Notes: generated from the sequence alone by a model not told the origin. Counted from the first letter of the whole stretch, positions 31,052 to 43,303 are shown. The stretch is 63,577 bases of DNA, filler included, from Ministeria vibrans ATCC 50519 (GCA_943704425.1; 7 parts of 7 records of this genome joined end to end with filler, not necessarily neighbours in it), one strand, 5' to 3'. Program-made: numbers and translations.

Positions 31052-32911
<1,860 letters not shown>

Positions 32912-33109
32912 TTAATATTATTATTGATTGTTATTCTTCTATTGATTATTATTCTTTTCTTTTATTATTATTAATTTTTTTCTTATTTCTAACGATTAAC
33001 ATTATTGCGTCATGTTTTAACTTATTATCTTGACAAATATGGCAATAAGATGAGATAACACTGACTTTCATTAAACGCTAAATAATAAAGAAAACAAACA
33101 AAAAAAGGC

Positions 33110-36100
33110 TCACTTGAGCTTCCGCACATCAAACACCCCGAAATGGCCATCAAAGCCAACCACAAGTCGATTGATGCCGGCGGGCGCAATGCTCTGCACC
33201 GGAGCCGCAAACTCAACGGTCTTCATCGTTTGTGCACTCCCGTACAGCGGCAAAACGTGCAACCGGCACGTGCCCTTCTGGTTGGTTACTATGCGCAGCG
33301 ACGTCTTCGCAAAATCTTCCACGCCCGACTTCTTACTTTCTGCCGCCTGATCATTGGACAGGCTGAGGCGCTTCGATGAGTCGGTCTTGCGCAAAGGAGC
33401 TCGTCCTCCGCCGCCAACGGAGCTTGCACGTCTCGGCGACGAGTTCGCCGAGGGTGGGAGCGACGCGGAACGTCTCGGCGACGAGTTCGCCAAGGGTGGG
33501 AGCGACGCGGAACGTCTCGGCGACGAGTTCGCCGAGGGTGGGAGCGACGCGGAATCCACTTCTGAGCCGTTGAAGCTTCGTCGACTGCGCGGTTCATCAC
33601 TGGCTTCCGCCATCAATGCCACTGGTGAGGACGCCGTCGACTCAAACACGTTCTTGTTCTCCGTCACAGAGCCGAGCCACATGACCGCCACACACGTCGC
33701 CTGCACGGGCACCACACACGTTTCACTGTGTATGGGTGTATCGGGACTTGGCAGGCGCCACAGTCGCACGTCGCCACTCTCGTCCAGTGTCCACGGAGCT
33801 CCACGTCCGCCCAGCCATAGTCCACACACGGGGCTTACATGCCCAACCATCTCGACAAACAGCTCCAACGAGGCAGAGTCGTCCCTCTCTTCCTCCCCCT
33901 CCTCCTCCTCCTCCCTCAGGTCCCTGAGAACTCGCACGGGCGGTAAAGTCCACGCGCGAATGACTGTGTCAAAGCCAAAATAAAGTCGATGGCCCAGCGA
34001 GTCATCGTTCTCAGAGTAAATGGCAGCAACCCGCACATCTTTGAGTTTCTTCACATCACCAAACATCGCGACGCGCTTCCACGTATTGTTCAGACGCCAC
34101 ACTGAGACACTTGGGTCGCCGGAGCTGCAGGTGACTGCAACAGTCCCATCGGATGCAAGCGCAACCACATCAACCGCGTCATTATGCTTCTCCATCTGCT
34201 GCATTGTGTCAAAGCCCGACTCTAGTGGGGAAGAAGACCATAAAATCGCTTGCCCGTCCTTTGAGCCGGTGAGGACATGGTCGCCAGTTTCGTCGAGAGC
34301 CAGAGACAAGACCGAGCTGGACGGTTCAATATTCGCCAGTAATTGACCCGATTCGATGTCCCAGAGCTCCACACGGCCAGAAGCGTATCCAATAGCCAAA
34401 CGCTGGCCGTTTCCGCTGACGACAATATTGAGGACATTCTTGCGCCGAACGGCAGCCTCTCGCAACCTTGACACATCGGGCAAAAACCAGACTCGTGTCG
34501 CACCATCTGTCGTCCCGGCAACCACTTGCACCAGACCATCTTCCTCTCCAGAGTCAGCGCCAGTAGTGAGTGCCACGCTTGTGACCGACGCATCATTCCC
34601 AAGCAACATTCCCAACTGACGCTCGGTCGACGACGCCGCATCCCACACACGCAAGAGTCTCTCTCCACAGCCCGTCACCGCCAGAGATCGGTCTGTCGAG
34701 AGAGCAACGGCTTTTGCCGCACACGACGTCTGCCCAACACCCAGTCCCACGTCCGACTCATCCTCGACCTGAACCACACCACCCTGCGCATCGAGAGACA
34801 GACGCCACACCGCCAGCTTGTCTGCTCCGCCCATGGCAAAAAGTTCGAGGTATCCATCGTAGAGATCTGGCAGCCTCAAGGACACAAAAGTTGTCAGCGT
34901 TGCCCAGCTTTGCTTTTGGCGAACCACTTGCGATCGATCCAAGTCCACTGCCATGTTCGAGTCAGAGTCTCCCGACATGTCACTCTTCACCTCCCACACG
35001 CGCACTTCGCCATTGACAGAGGCACTTGCGACATGTAATTTGGGCAGCTTGAGAAGGTCCAATGTTTGAATGACCGACACACTCGACACGGTGTCGCAAT
35101 GGCCCTCGAGCACCACCGCCGGGGCACCGTCTTTCCATACCCACACGCTCTCGTCTTGTGACCCAGACACCACAAATGATGCGTCCACGGAGGGCGACGC
35201 AAGAGCACGAACTGCCTTGGTGTGCAACTTCGCCGCCTCTCCACGGGACGTGCCGTCGGTGGTGCTCCACCAACGGACCGTCGAGTCACTCGCGCCAGTC
35301 ACAATTGTGTCGTTAAACTCGTTATCGGACGTGATTATCAGAGCATGGATGGGATTTCCAACGGTAGGGTCGCGGCCCATCGCAAGAATGTCTGACCGCC
35401 ACACCAGCGTGCCATCGTCACCAGATACATCCCACCAACAGAGAACGCCGTCTGCACCACCTGTAACAATGTACATGCCATCCGTTGACACGGCCACAGA
35501 CGTGACACCGCCGACATGAGCCGAGTCCAACACCATCTCAGCCCGCCGATTAGACTCGTGTGCAAGAAAAGAACACTTCCATGACGCCGAAGGCTCGAGG
35601 TAGGGCCCGCTCATACTGTTTTTGAGGCTATCGGTTGCTGACTGTAGAAGACTGACCACAAAATCGTTTTTCTCAGCGCCGAGGTGGCCCTGCAAAAATA
35701 GAGTCAGGGAACGGTCGCTGAACGCAGTGGATGTCTCGTAGCCAAGCGCCAAGACGTCACGAACCATTCGCAGTGCGGCAAGCTTGGTGGATAAATCAGA
35801 GTGTTGCGGACGCGAGATCAACATCGTCAGATGACGCACAGCAGCGGCGTAGTCGCGAAGGACTGCACTTGACACATTTCCCTTTGTGCGTCCATCGGCG
35901 ACGCGTGACCAGATCCACCTGAACGACAACAGTAGGTCGCACATTTTGACTGTCTCGCCTGCACCCGCCATCTGCTCAATCAGGTGTTCAAGCAGAAATT
36001 CCGTTTCTGCATTTCGCGGCAGATCGCACCAGCTGCTGTTACTCTTCTTTCCATACGAATCATTCCATACGGAAAAGACGATACGGTGTTGCTTAGCACG

Positions 36101-38880
36101 CTCCTCCACCGTATTAGCTTTTGTCTCGACGTCGATGTAGTCAAACTGGACAGCGTGCATGGTGACCCAGTCGCCATCCCCGTCCGACTGCTGCAGCAGA
36201 GAGCCGTTGACAAGACGTTGAAGGGTGGTCGCACCAATGTTGTCTATGACATGTTGCGTGCCAATAGTTTCTTTTGACTGTGATGCTTCCCTGACCAAAT
36301 GCCGTTGTTTCTTTGTCCACATCTTCACAATCGTGTTGGAGGGAATTTGAGCGCCCTTTCCAAAAACAACCAAGTCTTTGTAGCAGGATGTGACAAACTT
36401 CAGTTCATCCATGGGGTCCTCCATGGCGTCGAGGCTCATCTTGGTTGCCTGAAAGGGCGTCAATGGAATGTTGGTCGAGGACGATTCGAAATCCCAATTC
36501 GGTAGCGCCTGGCGGACGTTCTCAAATACGGCGCTCCATCCCTCTCGCGTCGCCGCCGTATGGGCAAGTATGCCACCAACCAGGGCAATTGCCAAGGGCA
36601 AGCCGCCGCACATGTCGACAATTTTACCAGCACAGTCGGGAACAAAGCCATGTCGTGTCGTGTCCCACGACGCATGTTTGCACAGCATCTCGAGCGCCAG
36701 CTCCCGCGGAAGTGTCTCAAGCGCCAGGCGACTCGAGTCATCGTGAGCAACCCGTCGATGGCGTGTTGTCACCAAGACACGACAGCCCGGTGCCTGCTGG
36801 CAAACATCATAGAGAGCAGCGGTAAATCCAGTTTGCATCTCCCAGACGTCATCGAGTACAATGAGGACGTGACGTGTCCCGATCTGCTGAGCGAGCGATT
36901 GAACAGCTTTTTCAATCGGATTGTCGAGGCCGTTCAAGTCAATGCCAGTACCGCCAAAAGATTGCTCCAGGAGCACCAGAGTGCTTTCCACTGAGCGCGT
37001 TGATTGCTGTCCAATGGCGACCCAACGAACTCGGTCGCCAAATGCCAGCTGAAATTGCTTGTCGTGCACTACACCGCGTGCCAGCATTGTTTTGCCAAGA
37101 CCACCTTCGCCGACAAGAGTGTACATGGGAACAGCGCCTGAAGCTAAAGCGTCGTTGCCGAGAAGAAACCTCCGTATCCGCTGCAGATCTTTCTGGCGTG
37201 AGACATAGGAGCGCGGTAAGCTTGGAGGCCAGAAGTGCAATGCAGCGCTGGAGAGGCGATCGCCGCCGCTACACTCAGACAGCCGCTCGCTGAGTGCCTT
37301 CAAGCGAAACTGACGGGAGTCTGTTGCACTGTCACTGGGAATTTCGAGCTCGCTGCAAATATCGCGGAGAGCGTCCAGAAGATTTTTCGCCTCCACGGGG
37401 TCGAATTTTGACGCGTCTTTGGCCAGAAACTTGCGTGCGGCCTCAAAGGAAGCGTACACGAGGGGGGCACACATGTCGTTGAAGGCGTACTTGCGCGCGA
37501 GGAAGGTCTCCTGCAACAAGTTTGCCTCAACCAGAATCTCGGCAAGCAAGTCGTTGTCCGTCGATTCAAGAGCGGACCGGGAGACTTCTGGGGAGTACGA
37601 CTTGCGGAAGAACAGGTACTCGCCCTTGTTCTTGTCAAAGCCGGGCACTTTGACACGACCGTACGAGCACACTTGCGAGAGAATTTCGCTCTGGGGCGGA
37701 ACTGAGTTGTACAGTTTCAAGAGCTCTCCCAGACCTTCGCGCATGGCTATCGCCAGCATTGGGGCAGTCACCCAGTTGGCGGGCGCCGACGCCCCTCGCT
37801 GTACCATTTTGAAGACGGATCCATCACGCCAGGCCTGTTCAAATGCCATTTGCAAGAAGGTACCATTCGTAATGCTCCACGACGATGCCTTGAGGTTGGT
37901 GCCGGTGATGACTTGAAAGCAGGGACAGAGGACGCGCTCGAGGAACGACTCGGAGAGCTCCGAGCCAAACAAGGGCCAGGCTGGCGTGACCTTGTCGAGA
38001 TGGTCGCTCAAGATCGCTGCACCGGCCTTGCAGGCGTCAATAATCACCAATACCTGACCCCAACGCTGCTGCTCGGGATCGGTGACGCCGAGAATGTTGG
38101 CGAGGAGGCTGAGCGAGAAGAGCTGTGACCACTGTCCTGTGTGCGGATCCGCTTTGGCCTCTCCGAAAATCATGCCAAACTCAGGGGTACCGGCAGGAGT
38201 GGCAGTGGTGGCGGTCTCGCCATGGCCCACAAGGTACACGAGGAGCTGGTCGTGCGGGGTGACGGCGTGGCCGGGAGCTTGGTGAATGAGATCGACGACT
38301 GCTTGTTCGACGTTGGCCGTTGCGATCGACTCACAGACCGTCCACTGCTCGCTGGGCGACATCTGCTGCGGCTGCGACACGTCCGACAGCACGTGGACAA
38401 TGTAGCCCATCTCGGCAAGCGTGTGCGACAGCGAGGCGGTCGCTGCGGCAACTCCATCGAGATTGTCGAGCGACGCCTGGTCGGCGTAACGCGCGCGTCC
38501 GATGACAAGCGCTAGCTTGCAGTGGTGTATGTGTAGGTGTATCTGTGATCTGGCGCCCGTGTCGTCGCCAACAGCGGGCAGTTGTTCCGGTTGAGAGTCT
38601 GTCACAAAAATAGTGAAAAAAAAAAATAAGCGAAGTTTACTTTACGGAGAGTGACGCAAAAACAACATTCAAGACGCGTACCGGGGACGTGACTGGCACC
38701 AGGCTCGCTGTTTTCGGGAGGGGGTGTGCTTGAGGTGTCGTCGTTGTCGCGTGGCGTGTTCGTTGGTGTGTGTTGGGCTGCGGATGAAATCCAAGCGAGA
38801 AATTTCAACAGAGATGCCAGAGAGGCAATCACGAAGATCCAGACCGACGCTTGTGATGGTCCAGATGGGGCGCTTGGCAT
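33110..38880 (-). CDS. Caspase-like (peptidase C14) + NB-ARC + WD40 STAND protein, Apaf-1-like, with N-terminal hydrophobic segment
   Basis: Exon 1 (38880-38682) joins a 5.5-kb exon via phase-1 GT-AG intron 38599-38681. Motifs: LALVIG, YLVGHG (His), IIDAC (Cys); Walker A GEGGLGKT, Walker B LIVLDDVW, VLVTTR, GGLPLA, MHAVQ; helical domain LLLSFRWI; multiple WD40 repeats. Confidence 0.9.
33428..33553 (-). repeat. Three 42-bp coding tandem repeats (SASLPP[S/L]ANSSPRR)
   Basis: Unit acgtctcggcgacgagttcgcc[g/a]agggtgggagcgacgcgga x3. Confidence 0.95.
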
Positions 38881-39022: not shown

Positions 39023-39219
39023 TCAGATGTGAGAAGCGCCCGTTGTGTCGAGCATTCCGTCCTGAATGTTTCCCTTGCTAAAGTCCGTTAGTGGCTTTTT
39101 GCCTGTGAGACGTTCGTGTTCTTCGGGAGTGCGCCACAAAGTGTGAGGGATGAGCCATTTGTAGACGACTGAGAGGAAAGAGGCAGGAGGGGGATTAGAG
39201 ATGTGGGGAAAAGTGAGCG

Positions 39220-39317
<98 letters not shown>

Positions 39318-39493
39318 TGTGTGTGTGTGTGTGTGATAGAGAGTGTGTGTGATAGAGAGACAAAGTGATAGAGAGACAAAGTGATAGAGAGACAAAGTGA
39401 TAGAGAGACAAAGTGATAGAGAGACAAAGTGATAGAGAGACAAAGTGATAGAGAGACAAAGTGATAGAGAGACAAAGTGATAGAGAGACAAAG

Positions 39494-39581
<88 letters not shown>

Positions 39582-42046
39582 GAAAAATGTACCAAAAGTG
39601 TAGATGATGGAAAGAAGCATTAGAAGACCGATAAAGGCAAAAGTGTCGCGAGGCCCAAAGGCATCGTAGATGGCGGTGACAAAGATGGGACCGATGGTGC
39701 GGGCGCCCGAGCCACAGGCGGTGAGAAGGCCCATGCCAAAGCCCTGGGGCGCGGGACCCAGCACCTTACTGTAGATGGAGAACATCATGACGGACGACAT
39801 GGGGTAGCCAATGCCAATGAGCGCACTGCCCGCAATGAACTGGCCGAGCGGCAGAAGCGGCTGTGTCTCGCACCAGTGCGGTTCTGATGTGTTCGAGTTT
39901 GCATCGCCCAGTGCAACTGTGAGGGGCGACAGAGGAACGTAAAGGGCATACGCCTCTGACGAGATGTTGGTTTGGTTCGTCACAATAGGAGAGTGACATG
40001 CCATCTGGTTGAGTGACAAAGAGTGTGGGTAAGTACGTGAGTGAGTAAAGCAAGTTACAGTTCGAATAATAAACGTACATGACCCGGACCAAAGGGCAGG
40101 TAGACGACAAAGCCAAGGAAGCAGAAGAAGAGGCCCCAGATAAGAAGAGGGCGCTCGCCCCATTTGCGCGAGGCAGGTTTGATGCCCATGAAGACAAAAA
40201 CGGCGAGGATGCCCGAGACGCCGTAGAGGATGCCGTTGAACAGATCCTGTTGTTGGCCCGTCCACCCGTACTCATCACCCGTCAGCGGTGTGCCAATCCT
40301 GTTGGAGAGAGTGATAGTAAGTGAGTGAGTGACTGAGAGTAAGGGTGTGTATGTGTATGTGTGTGTGACTGAGAGTAAGCGTGTGTATGTGTATGTGTGT
40401 GTGTGTGTGACTGAGTCACTGCGTATGTGTGTGCGTGTGTATGAATTGGTGAAAATGAAGCGGAGTGCCCTTACGTTTCGTAGACAGAGAAGACAAATAG
40501 AATGATGGTGAAGATGATGAGAGAGGACAGTGCAGCAAACTTGTCATATGCTTTTGCTTCGGGTGAGAGTTCCGTTTCCTGTTTACTCTCTCCTCCTTCG
40601 AGTTGAGCAATCTATGAATGGAATGCGTCAGAGAAGGTGAGGGGAGGGATCACGAGTCTTGACCTTGTGTTCGCGGAAAAAGACAAAGACACAAATGAGA
40701 TTGATGAGGCCGAGCACAGCGGAGATCCAACCAGGGCCCGTCAGGAAGTCAAGAACAAAGGGACCCGAGTGAATACCCGGCTTGAGCGACGTAAAGGCCG
40801 AGCCCATAGCGGGTCCCACAATAAAACCCAGGCCTTGTGCGGCGCTCATGTTTGCCATGGCGGCTGTGCGTTCCGTCACACGCGTCGCTGTCGCAACGTA
40901 TGCGCGACACACGGCGACATTGCCTGCGCCCAGACCCACCAAGATGCGGGCCACTAGCATGAAGTACTCGGCGTTGCTGCCGTTGAATGATCCCGCAAAG
41001 CAGTACATCACATTGCCTGCAAAGAATGAATGTTTCACGATCATGACATGCGTAGGGTGCAGAGCAAAGAATTGTGTGTGTGTGTGTGTGTGTACCGCCA
41101 ATGGTGAAGAAAAGTGTGATAATCAATGGTTCCATGTACGGACGGTAGTTAGACCAGACGCCAAAGACGGGCGATCCAATGAGCTGACCCAGCGAGTAGG
41201 ATGACACAATCCAGCCAAGGAAGGTCTTTGTGCCGCCAAGACTCTGAAGGTAAGGCCACAGAGTCGACAGCACAATCGAGAAGCCTACAAGTGTATTGTG
41301 TTTGTGTTTTAGTGAGTGGGAGTGAGTGAATAACAGCAAAAGGCAAAGGGTGCTCCAGAGCTGCTGTGCCTCCTTCGTACCGACACTGGAGAGGAAGGTG
41401 GTGAGGTACATGACGCGGATGGAGTTCCAGCGACTCTTGTAGTCTGCGTCGCTCTCTTTGGCCACTTCCAGCGGCTCTGAGTTGGGGTGGTCTTCGCCGT
41501 CGCCGCCACCGCCAGTGCCCAGCAGCGACTGGCTTTCCTCGATCGTGCTGATGGGATCGCTGTACTTGCGCCCGCGTACCGACGATTCTTCGCCGTACGT
41601 TCGGCTCTGCCAGCTCGCTCCAAACTTCTCCTCTGTGTCGTTGTACGCGTCCAACGGCGATCTTCGGCGCTTGTCCCATTGACCGCCACGTCTACACAAA
41701 GCGTCACGACGACACCGCGTCAGCAGACAAGGCTGTGCAAAAGTATATTCTTTCTCTTTTCACTCCATTTTTTTTTTTTTTTTTTTTTTGAAAAACGCCT
41801 TTTTTTTGGTGTCGCGAGATTTTGAGCGAATATGTGATTCTGAGCAAGAGATGGGTGTGGTACAGGTGTTCTAAGACATTCTGAATGCCGGAGAGCGGCG
41901 GGAAGGAGCGCGCAGGGGCTTTGGGGGACGATCATATGTTAAAGGATGTCTTACCCATAAGGTGAATCGTCATTGGCGCTGCTTAAGCTGCTGACTCCCG
42001 CATCGTGCGTGACGCCCGTGGTGGCGAGAGCGTCTTTGATACTCAT
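39023..42046 (-). CDS. MFSD8: Major facilitator superfamily transporter, MFSD8/CLN7-like
   Basis: SIRVMYLTTFLSSVGFSIV..LWPYL, SYSLGQLIGSP, ARILVGLGAGNVAVCRAY, IYSKVLGPAPQG, GSGARTIGP. First exon from ATG 42046 splices in phase 2. Confidence 0.88.
39223..39575. repeat. Intronic (GA)n/(GT)n microsatellite enclosing a 16-bp minisatellite (GAGAGACAAAGTGATA)x~9
   Basis: Direct reading; perfect 16-bp units at ~39352-39500. Confidence 0.95.
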
Positions 42047-42332: not shown

Positions 42333-43303
42333 ATGGATCCACAACCCCCCTCACACTTTCTCGTGATGGTCAGCGGGCAAATTGCGTCAGCTCAGGTTTG
42401 ATAAACTTCATTCAGTGTCAGTTAGACAACCTACACTTCCTGTTCGTCCCTGCGACCTATCCCGCAATCCCAACGTCTGCACTTTCACTACATACACCCC
42501 ACAGCAACCATGTATCCTTTCCACCAAAGCGCGCGTAGCCCTGTTGGTCCTAGTGCTTCCTGTGTCGCATTGACGACAACTGTGTATTTTCTCTTTGTTG
42601 CTTTTTGTGCAGTTTCCCGAACACGACAACCTATATGCCAAGTATGCCTTTGTACACGGCAAAGACTGGGCCATTGTATCGGTAAGAAGCCGGCCGGGTC
42701 GTCGCCGTCGAAGCGCCAGTCGCTGAGCAGCTTAACTCTATTATTATTATGATACTCTTCGTCGCAGGGACTTGACGAAGGAATCACACAGATTGCGCGC
42801 AAGAGTGCTGACGAACGACAGGCGCTCGTGTGGAACTTTCCTCTTGATGTTACGTTTAAGAGCACCAATGTGTACGGATGGCCGCAGCTCGTGGTGAGCG
42901 TGTACGGTTTGGATGGAGCGGGACGCGACGTTGTTAGGGGTTACGGCACCGTCCGTGTGCCTCTGTCGCCTGGACGTCACACCTGCACTGTGCCATTGTT
43001 TGTGCCGCAGTCGTCGTCCAAGTTACAACAGTTTATTTCATGGCTTTTGGGTCAATTGCCAGAGTATGTTGATGCAAAATTTGTGACACAGAGCGAAGGG
43101 AGAGAAGGTAAGACAAGACGGAGCGAAAAGATCGATATGAATTCGAAAGAAATTCCCTACATGATTCGACTCTCTAACCTCTTGCAGTAACGCGCGTGCG
43201 CACCCAAGGAAATCTTGATGTGTCGTTTACCGTGGTATCAAAGGACATGAAACGATGTGGCTACGAGACGGGTCCGGTCTGCGCAGAGACTGACTATTTG
43301 TAA
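42333..43303 (+). CDS. B9D1: B9 domain-containing protein 1 (ciliary transition zone, MKS module)
   Basis: [74 protein letters not shown]. Confidence 0.93.

What the first reader, a model, noticed from the sequence alone, without database searches (positions are those of the whole stretch)
33110..38880. Self-contained 'apoptosome': caspase-like protease fused directly to an Apaf-1-type NB-ARC/WD40 sensor
Seen: an intact C14 His-Cys dyad (VGHG, His at 38222-38224; IDAC, Cys at 38030-38032), a full NB-ARC (Walker A at 37088-37111, DDVW, TTR, GLPL), an Apaf-like helical domain and WD40 propellers in one polypeptide. Known: animal Apaf-1 recruits a separate caspase-9 via CARDs, while protease-STAND fusions are characteristic of bacterial immune/conflict systems. 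Inference: ligand-triggered oligomerisation would activate the protease in cis, giving a protist a one-gene sensor-executioner for death or immunity.
Basis: partly seen in the sequence, partly recalled or inferred. Interest (0 to 1): 0.9.

Follow-up and report, generated by a model that had tools for sequence, protein, structure and literature searches.

The report
Caspase-like protease fused to Apaf-1-like sensor
A flagellated marine protist makes one spliced, polyadenylated mRNA for a 1,895-residue protein that joins a caspase-family protease to an Apaf-1-like ATPase switch and WD40 sensor, a layout known in bacteria that I did not find reported for a eukaryote.

Summary
One minus-strand gene has exon 1 at 38880-38682, an 83-nt GT..AG intron at 38681-38599, and exon 2 at 38598-33110. 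It encodes, in order:
- a short hydrophobic N-terminus;
- a divergent Peptidase_C14 domain with an intact His/Cys dyad;
- a helical linker;
- a complete NB-ARC module (P-loop, DDVW, TTR, GLPL, MHD-like His);
- an Apaf-1-like helical domain;
- about 13-14 WD40 blades.

An RNA-derived contig lacking the intron spans protease, NB-ARC and WD40, and another contig of that run ends in a poly(A) tail, so this is one eukaryotic transcript. It is neither two genes nor bacterial contamination.

The modelled p20 half matches caspases and metacaspases (Z 11.5), with Cys192 falling on the caspase catalytic Cys. The NB-ARC model matches ADP-bound Apaf-1 best.

By sequence, the nearest NB-ARC relatives are bacterial defence-island STANDs. 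The protease has a metacaspase-style D-x-C motif, not the caspase QACxG. Only four remote protease relatives exist in 1.8 billion proteins. One of them is also joined to NB-ARC, there with TPR repeats.

The mechanism is inferred, not shown: ligand-triggered oligomerisation activating the protease. I rate it a new variant of a known, mostly bacterial, kind.

The parts
38682..38880 (-). Exon 1: ATG plus 66 codons and 1 nt. Contains a 19-residue hydrophobic segment (residues 13-31, nt 38788-38844), then a Thr/Pro/Asp-rich spacer.
   Evidence: Kyte-Doolittle 19-residue mean of 2.15. RNA contig X6 covers 38682-38850.
38599..38681 (-). Spliceosomal intron, 83 nt, GT..AG with a polypyrimidine tract.
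   Evidence: Sequence. Contigs of runs X6 and X15 skip exactly these 83 nt, ends CT..AC on the + strand. Run X4 keeps them.
33110..38598 (-). Exon 2: the rest of the coding sequence through the stop codon. No internal stops.
   Evidence: X6 contig of 5,243 nt is continuous over 33525-38598.
37601..38527 (-). Caspase-family (Peptidase_C14) domain, ORF aa 27-335. The p20-like half is well supported; the p10-like half is recognisable by motif only.
   Evidence: Pfam PF00656 27.4 bits. PADLOC 'caspase' and NCBIfam caspase_w_EACC1 give weak hits. AF2 core pLDDT 65-88. Foldseek gives 44 hits at E<1e-3; all those listed are caspase-fold proteins. VIA-align Z 11.5 to Yca1 and caspase-1/-11. In the Atlas, 28 of 30 feature neighbours are Peptidase_C14 clusters.
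38222..38224 (-). Catalytic His (ORF aa 128, VGHG).
   Evidence: Invariant in the 5-member family alignment. Aligns with the caspase ...THG His.
38030..38032 (-). Catalytic Cys (ORF aa 192, IDAC). Asp190 gives a metacaspase/paracaspase-type D-x-C.
   Evidence: Cys and Asp are invariant in the family. Model residue 189 coincides with caspase-1 C285 and caspase-11 C254 at the alignment ends.
37235..37600 (-). Helical linker of about 120 aa between protease and NB-ARC. Absent in the relative L001.
   Evidence: No Pfam family. Collinear BLASTP with L001 jumps from aa 335 to aa 458.
36506..37192 (-). NB-ARC nucleotide-binding domain plus HD1: Walker A 37088-37111, Walker B DDVW 36842-36853, TTR 36761-36769, GLPL 36593-36604.
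   Evidence: Pfam 107.6 bits. Motif columns invariant across 23 NB-ARC proteins. PDB sequence hits: ZAR1 64.9 bits, Apaf-1 39.5 bits.
36149..36160 (-). MHD-like motif (MHAV) of the winged-helix domain. His817 is invariant.
   Evidence: WH_DRP and APAF-1-like_WHD are sub-threshold hits in the right place.
35606..36103 (-). Second helical domain (HD2, Apaf-1-like), ORF aa about 833-1000.
   Evidence: AF2 model helices 393-557. Foldseek aligns 555 columns with Apaf-1 1-591 (1z6t) against about 390 columns for plant NLRs. Pfam APAF1_C only 14.9 bits.
33746..35548 (-). WD40 sensor region, about 12 recognisable blades. An acidic insert and further blade-like segments follow downstream.
   Evidence: Pfam WD40 and many beta-propeller families. 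Blade-ending motif count.
33428..33554 (-). Three tandem copies of a 42-nt unit inside the C-terminal region, encoding a Ser/Pro/Arg-rich 14-aa unit. Copy number appears variable.
   Evidence: TRF finds 3.0 copies at 97% match. X15 contig skips 84 nt, i.e. two units.
33113..33313 (-). C-terminal about 65 aa, beta-rich. Possibly the last blade that closes a propeller (inference).
   Evidence: Translation. No Pfam hit.
33030..33050 (-). Polyadenylation site, about 70 nt after the stop codon.
   Evidence: X6 contig ends at 33040 with a 24-nt poly-T loose end on the + strand.

Best explanation
This is a genuine nuclear gene of a flagellated marine eukaryote. It encodes a 1,895-residue 'all-in-one' STAND/NLR-like protein. 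In order, it has a short hydrophobic N-terminus, a caspase-family (metacaspase/orthocaspase-like) cysteine protease, a helical linker, an NB-ARC ATPase with winged-helix and Apaf-1-like HD2 domains, and a double-propeller-sized WD40 region. The gene structure, single transcript, domain order, intact catalytic and ATPase motifs and the folds are shown here. The following steps are inferred by analogy with Apaf-1, plant and bacterial STANDs. The ADP-bound monomer is held closed by the WHD His and the WD40 region. A ligand bound by the WD40 propellers allows nucleotide exchange and ring-like oligomerisation through the NB-ARC. This crowds the N-terminal protease domains so that they become active by induced proximity. 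They then cleave the protein itself and/or unknown substrates, probably after Arg or Lys given the D-x-C motif. The result would be a cell-death or immune output. The hydrophobic N-terminus may tether the complex to a membrane.
For: One gene, one mRNA. The ORF is uninterrupted. The intron is removed in contigs of two runs. One spliced contig covers 33525-38850, and a second contig of the same run ends in a poly(A) tail at 33040. Neighbours are eukaryotic genes: xylulokinase, an MFS transporter and a B9 ciliary protein with introns.
Protease. Pfam C14 scores above its cut-off. His, Gly, Asp and Cys are invariant across the five family members. The AF2 core matches caspase-fold proteins in the top Foldseek and VIA hits, at Z 11.5, rmsd about 3 A over 125-136 residues, with Cys192 falling on the caspase catalytic Cys. 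Atlas neighbours are C14 clusters.
Switch. NB-ARC scores 107.6 bits. The P-loop, DDVW, TTR, GLPL and MHD-His columns are invariant. The AF2 model (pLDDT 79, pTM 0.81) matches ADP-bound and full-length Apaf-1 best, at E 6e-16 and up to 555 aligned columns including HD2.
Architecture precedent. The whole-protein Atlas neighbours are mostly bacterial caspase + STAND + WD40 proteins. The literature describes metacaspase-NACHT-WD40 as widespread in bacteria (PMC3501461). The closest NB-ARC relative P0002 is a bacterial NB-ARC-APAF1_C-WD40 gene directly preceded by a CHAT caspase-like protease gene.
Conservation of the fusion. The distant relative L001 has the C14-like domain collinear with, and after a single frameshift in the same reading frame as, NB-ARC + TPR.
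Against: No activity, oligomerisation, ligand or substrate has been tested.
The p10-like half and the loop after the catalytic Cys are modelled at pLDDT below 50. A complete active site and the His-Cys distance are therefore not demonstrated.
The Pfam C14 score is only 6 bits above its cut-off.
Seven of eight differences between strains are amino-acid changes. That fits either diversifying selection or relaxed constraint.
The two closest metagenomic relatives carry a frameshift (L001) and an in-frame stop (L004). These may be assembly errors or decay.
No candidate death effector such as a gasdermin lies in the 13.6-kb piece.
A hydrophobic N-terminus could instead be a signal peptide, which would be odd for a cytosolic ATPase switch.
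Confidence: 0.6

Rival explanations
1. The protein is a regulated protease with a non-lethal role, such as proteostasis, signalling or developmental processing, as argued for many metacaspases and orthocaspases. The NB-ARC-WD40 part would act as a scaffold or substrate-recruiting module rather than a death or immunity trigger.
For: The review PMC5756287 stresses homeostatic roles for non-metazoan caspase homologues. No death effector gene lies nearby. The gene is expressed at detectable level in several ordinary culture RNA data sets.
Against: Characterised STAND proteins with N-terminal effector domains and C-terminal repeats mostly act in immunity, death or allorecognition (PMC7159879, PMC4986451, PMC12881547). 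The nearest bacterial NB-ARC relatives sit in defence-island-like contexts: IS66, a Phd/PIN toxin-antitoxin pair, WYL and CHAT.
Confidence: 0.2
2. The protease domain is catalytically dead or the gene is decaying. It would then be a scaffold (pseudo-protease) or a lineage-specific gene under relaxed constraint.
For: 7 of 8 inter-strain differences are non-synonymous. Relatives carry a frameshift or a stop. The domain is very divergent, with only 4 remote hits in 1.84 billion representatives. The p10 half is poorly modelled.
Against: The 5.7-kb reading frame is intact and the mRNA is spliced and polyadenylated. His, Gly, Asp and Cys are invariant at about 30% identity across family members. All ATPase motifs are intact.
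Confidence: 0.1
3. The hydrophobic N-terminus is a cleaved signal peptide, so the protein enters the secretory pathway or an organelle and acts there.
For: A 19-residue hydrophobic stretch starts at residue 13 with small residues after it. Extracellular or membrane-associated bacterial metacaspases with N-terminal transmembrane helices are described (PMC3501461).
Against: NB-ARC switches need cytosolic nucleotides. No positively charged n-region precedes the hydrophobic stretch. The four relatives lack such a segment.
Confidence: 0.06
4. Artefact: two adjacent genes, a chimeric assembly or bacterial contamination merely look like a fusion.
For: Bacterial proteins are the closest architectural analogues.
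Against: The ORF is continuous. A spliced RNA contig spans all domains, a further contig of that run carries a poly(A) tail, and the same sequence is present in runs from 8 studies. There is a GT..AG intron, and the flanking genes are eukaryotic with introns.
Confidence: 0.02

Closest known systems
Bacterial metacaspase/orthocaspase-STAND-WD40 proteins (metacaspase-NACHT-WD40; two Chloroflexus metacaspase-NB-ARC proteins; Asplund-Samuelsson et al. 2012, PMC3501461)
   Same: They share the N-to-C order: C14 protease, STAND NTPase, WD40 repeats in one polypeptide. They are the nearest neighbours of the whole protein in the Atlas. N-terminal transmembrane helices are also reported in some.
   Different: This one is a spliced, polyadenylated eukaryotic gene. 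Its NTPase is NB-ARC with an Apaf-1-like HD2, whereas most of the bacterial proteins carry NACHT or nSTAND. Its protease domain has no close bacterial relative: no bacterial hit at E<1e-3.
Apaf-1 / Dark / CED-4 apoptosome
   Same: The NBD-HD1-WHD-HD2 module is followed by about two propellers' worth of WD40 repeats. ADP-bound Apaf-1 is the best structural match. The output is a caspase-family protease activated on an oligomeric platform (inferred here).
   Different: There is no CARD. The protease is covalently attached rather than recruited. The protease is D-x-C metacaspase-like, not Asp-specific QACxG. Sequence similarity to Apaf-1 (39.5 bits) is lower than to plant ZAR1 (64.9 bits) or bacterial NB-ARC-WD40 proteins (94 bits).
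Fungal NLRs with N-terminal protease domains (S8 or CHAT) that control gasdermins (reviewed in PMC12881547)
   Same: These are eukaryotic all-in-one protease-NOD-repeat receptors. WD40, TPR or ANK sensors are interchangeable, as with WD40 here and TPR in relative L001.
   Different: The protease family differs: C14 here, S8 or CHAT there. No gasdermin-like neighbour lies in this piece. The organism is a flagellated protist, not a fungus.
Bacterial NB-ARC-APAF1_C-WD40 STANDs in defence islands (hits P0001 and P0002)
   Same: They are the closest sequence relatives of the NB-ARC part (26-28% identity, E 1e-20 to 1e-21). P0002 is directly preceded by a CHAT caspase-like protease gene.
   Different: There the effector is TIR (P0001) or is encoded as a separate gene (P0002). 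Identity is low, so there is no sign of recent transfer.
Eukaryotic metacaspase-like proteases (p20-only) of algae and early animals
   Same: They share the His-Cys dyad and the D-x-C motif, and they occur in protists and algae.
   Different: The review PMC5756287 states that, among the p20-only (p10-less) caspase homologues, only the prokaryotic ones carry additional domains and the eukaryotic ones consist of the p20 domain alone. This protein carries about 1,500 additional residues of NB-ARC-WD40 and has a recognisable p10-like segment.

Membership tests
Peptidase C14 (caspase/metacaspase/orthocaspase/paracaspase, clan CD) | Significant match to the family profile | tested here: met
   PF00656 scores 27.4 bits against a cut-off of 21.4, E 3.3e-6. 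Three of the four relatives give PF00656 matches, only one above the cut-off. 28 of 30 Atlas neighbours are C14 clusters.
Peptidase C14 (caspase/metacaspase/orthocaspase/paracaspase, clan CD) | Caspase-haemoglobinase fold with His after beta3 and Cys after beta4 | tested here: met
   The AF2 core runs beta1-alpha1-beta2-alpha2-beta3(His)-hairpin-alpha3-beta4(Cys). VIA-align gives Z 11.5 to Yca1 and caspase-1/-11, with model residue 189 matching C285/C254. The p10 half is at pLDDT below 50, so only the p20 half is shown.
Peptidase C14 (caspase/metacaspase/orthocaspase/paracaspase, clan CD) | Dyad residues juxtaposed in space; proteolytic activity | not testable with these tools
Caspases in the strict sense (Asp-specific, animal type) | QACxG pentapeptide and the Arg179/Gln283/Arg341 Asp-binding pocket | tested here: not met
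   The motif is IDACKAG, with Asp in place of Gln283. The position of Arg179 (two residues before the conserved Gly of the L-x-G motif) is Leu. This assignment rests on established caspase/metacaspase structural knowledge.
STAND NB-ARC (AP-ATPase) NTPases | Walker A, Walker B (hhhhDD), RNBS-B/sensor-1 TTR, GLPL and the MHD-type His in the winged helix | tested here: met
   All are present and invariant in a 23-sequence alignment. Pfam NB-ARC scores 107.6 bits.
Apaf-1/Dark/CED-4 apoptosome family | N-terminal CARD that recruits a separate CARD-caspase | tested here: not met
   No CARD appears among the Pfam families listed. The N-terminus is a C14 domain.
Apaf-1/Dark/CED-4 apoptosome family | HD2 (APAF1_C) helical domain between WHD and WD40 | tested here: inconclusive
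   Pfam APAF1_C scores 14.9 bits, below the 22.8 cut-off. However, the AF2 model aligns over 555 columns with Apaf-1 1-591, which includes HD2.
Apaf-1/Dark/CED-4 apoptosome family | Orthology: NB-ARC groups with animal Apaf-1 in a phylogeny | not tested
   No Apaf-1, CED-4 or Dark sequences could be obtained for a tree. By bit score, bacterial (94) and plant (64.9) NB-ARCs are closer than Apaf-1 (39.5).
Bacterial metacaspase-STAND-WD40 conflict proteins | C14 + STAND + WD40 in one polypeptide | tested here: met
Bacterial metacaspase-STAND-WD40 conflict proteins | Prokaryotic gene | tested here: not met
   Spliceosomal intron, poly(A) tail and eukaryotic neighbours.
Fungal protease-NLR / gasdermin clusters | Adjacent gasdermin-like substrate gene | tested here: not met
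   The neighbours within the 13.6-kb piece are xylulokinase, an MFS transporter and a B9 protein. The rest of the genome was not available.

The most novel reading that the evidence does not exclude
This is a working single-chain 'cis-apoptosome' of a unicellular eukaryote. An Apaf-1-like NB-ARC-HD2-WD40 switch, possibly membrane-tethered, would activate its own covalently attached caspase-family protease on oligomerisation to kill the cell or defend it. Together with the C14-NB-ARC-TPR relative, it would define a protist family of protease-armed NLRs. That family would be a living example of the 'all-in-one' state proposed to precede the adaptor-mediated Apaf-1/caspase-9 arrangement.
Probability: 0.35. 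Interest if true: 0.8.

Novelty: new variant of a known kind. Interest (0 to 1): 0.6.

Why it matters
Animal apoptosomes bring caspases to an NB-ARC platform through adaptor domains. Bacteria often fuse the protease directly to the switch. A review of non-metazoan caspase homologues (PMC5756287) says that, among the p20-only forms, only the prokaryotic ones carry extra domains. This expressed protist gene is an exception to that picture. It gives a tractable one-protein system in a eukaryote for asking whether induced proximity on a STAND ring is enough to fire a caspase-family protease. It could also show what such a protease cuts, and whether regulated death or immunity in unicellular eukaryotes uses NLR-like sensors. 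Finally, it adds a data point on whether eukaryotic apoptotic parts came from bacterial conflict systems.

Tried and rejected
- No full-length relatives turned up. A word-indexed search of aa 1-1000 found no protein with C14 + NB-ARC, and not the protein itself.
- An exhaustive phmmer of the protease part found only 4 remote hits. A profile search with their alignment returned only one of its own members.
- A PDB sequence search with the protease part found nothing at E<=10. The profile version gave only marginal caspase hits.
With the single protein it found nothing in metagenome contigs or viral contigs.
- The organism could not be named. Run labels are coded, and the neighbouring xylulokinase only gave 53-58% identity to animal enzymes.
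- Bacterial contamination and a two-gene artefact were considered and rejected.
- A gasdermin-type neighbour was looked for and not found.
- No homo-oligomer or complex prediction was run. The protease model is too weak, and NB-ARC copies would exceed the size limit, so a negative result would have meant nothing.
- Exon 1 was only translated and inspected. All searches used exon 2 by reference.
- The His-Cys distance could not be measured because model coordinates are not exposed.

Full report
**What is there**

The piece carries one very long open reading frame on the minus strand, 33110-38605, 1,831 codons with no internal stop.
- His of VGHG at 38222-38224
- Cys of IDAC at 38030-38032
- Walker A GEGGLGKT at 37088-37111
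- DDVW at 36842-36853
- TTR at 36761-36769
- GLPL at 36593-36604

The first Met inside the long ORF lies within the protease fold, so the ORF cannot start there. Upstream, a 66-codon ORF beginning with ATG at 38880 ends in a GT donor. An 83-nt T-rich stretch ending in AG follows. Exon 1 (38880-38682, 199 nt) plus exon 2 (38598-33110, 5,489 nt) gives 1,896 codons in frame, i.e. a 1,895-residue protein. All searches used exon 2 by reference.

**Transcript evidence**

The sequence is held by runs of 8 studies. In run X6, a 5,243-nt contig covers 33525-38598. It then skips exactly 38599-38681 (ends CT..AC on the + strand, i.e. GT..AG on the gene strand) and continues over 38682-38850. Run X15 shows the same joint. 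Run X4 keeps the intron, as DNA would. Another X6 contig ends at 33040 with a 24-nt poly-T loose end, which is a poly(A) tail about 70 nt after the stop.

So the protease, the NB-ARC and the WD40 region sit on one spliced, polyadenylated mRNA. The contig break at 33457-33525 coincides with a tandem repeat. The flanking genes are eukaryotic:
- a xylulokinase at 31173-32453(-)
- an MFS transporter at 39195-41699(-)
- a B9 ciliary protein at 42595-43190(+), split by an intron

The organism is therefore a flagellated eukaryote. The runs that hold the sequence include algae and seawater metagenomes. I could not name the organism.

**Protease domain**

Sequence evidence:
- Pfam Peptidase_C14 matches ORF aa 30-195 at 27.4 bits (cut-off 21.4).
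- PADLOC 'caspase' and NCBIfam 'caspase, EACC1-associated type' give weaker matches over the same residues.
- The domain is very isolated. An exhaustive phmmer against 1.84 billion representative proteins found four hits, at E 1.5e-10 to 4e-5 and 29-35% identity.
- In the five-sequence alignment the His, the following Gly, and the D-x-C Asp and Cys are invariant.

Structural evidence:
- An AF2 model from this shallow alignment is poor overall (mean pLDDT 53.6). Its core (residues about 23-190, pLDDT 65-88) has the p20 order beta1-alpha1-beta2-alpha2-beta3-hairpin-alpha3-beta4.
- Foldseek against the PDB returns 44 matches at E<1e-3. The top matches listed are all caspase-fold proteins: MALT1, Arabidopsis metacaspase 9, caspases 1/2/3/9 and a Candida metacaspase.
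- VIA-align gives Z 11.5, rmsd about 3 A over 125-136 residues, to yeast Yca1 and to caspase-1/-11 p20.
- The alignments end at model residue 189/190 against caspase-1 285/286 and caspase-11 254. The predicted catalytic Cys therefore coincides with the caspase catalytic Cys.
- The Atlas language-model search places the domain among Peptidase_C14 clusters: 28 of 30 hits, score 0.96.

The second half contains a metacaspase-like p10 pattern: a strand ending ...VITGT, then ...NGTFLQMAF. It is modelled below pLDDT 50, so a complete active site is not demonstrated. The motif is D-A-C, as in metacaspases, orthocaspases and MALT1, not the caspase Q-A-C-x-G, and the caspase Arg179 position is Leu. From established knowledge of these families, I infer Arg/Lys specificity at P1 rather than Asp. 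It is a caspase homologue, not a caspase in the strict sense.

**Switch and sensor**

Pfam NB-ARC scores 107.6 bits over aa 472-700. In an alignment with 22 NB-ARC proteins the P-loop, the Walker B DDVW, TTR, GLPL and a His at aa 817 (M-H-A, the MHD position) are invariant.

An AF2 model of aa 441-1010 is good (pLDDT 79.4, pTM 0.81). Its best PDB matches are full-length mouse Apaf-1 and ADP-bound human Apaf-1 1-591, at E 6e-16 to 3.5e-15, TM 0.56-0.62 and 480-555 aligned columns. Plant NLRs align over only about 390 columns. The helical domain after the winged helix is therefore Apaf-1-like in fold, although Pfam APAF1_C is below threshold (14.9 bits).

By sequence the order is different. Bacterial NB-ARC-WD40 proteins are closest (94 and 90 bits, 26-28% identity), then plant ZAR1 (64.9 bits), then Apaf-1 (39.5 bits). 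The two bacterial hits lie in defence-island-like contexts. One is TIR-NB-ARC-WD40 next to an IS66 transposase. The other is NB-ARC-APAF1_C-WD40 directly preceded by a CHAT caspase-like protease gene, beside a Phd/PIN toxin-antitoxin pair and a WYL protein.

Downstream, Pfam finds WD40 and many propeller families over aa about 1020-1520. A motif count gives about 12 blades up to aa 1617, with blade-like sequence beyond that. This is roughly two propellers.

**Is the fusion unique?**

No. Among the four protease relatives, metagenome scaffold L001 has the C14-like ORF followed by an NB-ARC + TPR ORF. Reading the frames shows that, after a 1-nt frameshift inside the protease domain, the p10-like part runs without a stop into the NB-ARC. 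Both parts align collinearly with the window protein in that one frame, at E 0.008 and E 0.036 for single comparisons. So a distant relative, about 30% identical, has the same protease-NB-ARC join with a different repeat sensor. This is the usual modular pattern of NLR-like proteins. L001 has a frameshift and L004 an in-frame stop. I cannot tell whether these are assembly errors or decay.

**Comparison with what is known**

The C14-STAND-WD40 layout is well described in bacteria. Metacaspase-NACHT-WD40 is 'widely distributed', and two Chloroflexus proteins carry NB-ARC (PMC3501461). It is common in multicellular bacteria (PMC4986451, PMC7159879). The whole-protein Atlas neighbours are mainly such bacterial proteins.

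In eukaryotes, fungal NLRs with S8 or CHAT protease heads that control gasdermins are known (PMC12881547). For p20-only C14 homologues, the review PMC5756287 states that only the prokaryotic ones carry additional domains and that the eukaryotic metacaspase-like proteases consist of the p20 domain alone. My literature searches found no eukaryotic C14-NB-ARC fusion. That is absence within the held library only. I therefore rate this a new variant of a known kind: a bacterial-style all-in-one protease-STAND in a eukaryote, with an Apaf-1-like switch.

**Mechanism**

The domain order, the intact motifs, the folds and the single mRNA are shown. The rest is inferred. The protein would have a closed ADP-bound resting state. 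Ligand binding to the WD40 region would allow nucleotide exchange and NB-ARC ring formation. The N-terminal protease domains would then be activated by induced proximity and cleave the protein itself or other substrates, leading to a death or immune output.

Points against, or still open:
- The p10 half is poorly modelled.
- Seven of eight inter-strain differences are non-synonymous, which fits either diversifying selection or relaxed constraint.
- No effector gene lies nearby.
- The hydrophobic N-terminus could be a membrane anchor or a signal peptide.

**Verdict**

Interest is moderate to high (0.6).

Noticed in passing
window 38788-38844 (-), exon 1 residues 13-31: A 19-residue hydrophobic segment (Kyte-Doolittle mean 2.15) sits at the extreme N-terminus, ahead of the protease. 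It could be a membrane anchor or a signal peptide. The four protease relatives lack it.
   Followed up: partly
window 33428-33554 (-): Three copies of a 42-nt tandem repeat encode a Ser/Pro/Arg-rich 14-aa unit inside the C-terminal propeller region. Two units read R-S-A-S-L-P, which fits the 14-3-3 mode-1 consensus RSxSxP (from memory, not tested). A contig of run X15 skips 84 nt (two units), so there is either copy-number variation or assembly collapse.
   Followed up: partly
window 33217, 34795, 35466, 35628, 37520, 37939, 37970, 37987: Of eight single-base differences between runs of differently labelled organisms or strains, seven change the amino acid. Three of them fall in the loop just after the catalytic Cys (aa 207, 212, 223). 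The sample is too small to separate diversifying selection from relaxed constraint.
   Followed up: partly
window 39222-39573: A long (GA)n/(CT)n microsatellite with a 16-nt super-period lies about 350 nt upstream of the start codon, between this gene and the MFS gene.
   Followed up: no
window 42595-43190 (+): A B9-C2 ciliary basal-body protein gene in two exons (Pfam 117 bits for the second). It shows that the organism builds cilia or flagella.
   Followed up: partly
window 31173-32453 (-): A xylulokinase (FGGY) exon whose best matches are all animal enzymes at 53-58% identity. No closer relative, and not the protein itself, is in the 5.8-billion-protein collection.
   Followed up: partly
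window 39195-41699 (-): A weak MFS-transporter-like gene split into at least two ORFs. The gap at 40325-40443 holds GT-rich tandem repeats and is probably an intron.
   Followed up: no
L001:1700-2100 and L004:1300-1642: The two closest metagenomic relatives of the protease are interrupted at the same region. L001 needs a 1-nt frameshift to continue into its NB-ARC-TPR. L004 has an in-frame stop where L001 has Arg. These are either errors or pseudogenes.
   Followed up: partly
contig of P0002 (JGI 3300050821, no DNA held): A bacterial NB-ARC-APAF1_C-WD40 gene is directly preceded by a 200-aa CHAT (caspase-like) protease gene, next to a Phd/PIN toxin-antitoxin pair and a WYL regulator. It is a split version of the same protease + Apaf-like switch idea.
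   Followed up: no
L003:2942-4087 and L002:588-2180: Large ORFs with no Pfam match flank the protease relatives on two other scaffolds. They could be unrecognised partner or effector domains.
   Followed up: no
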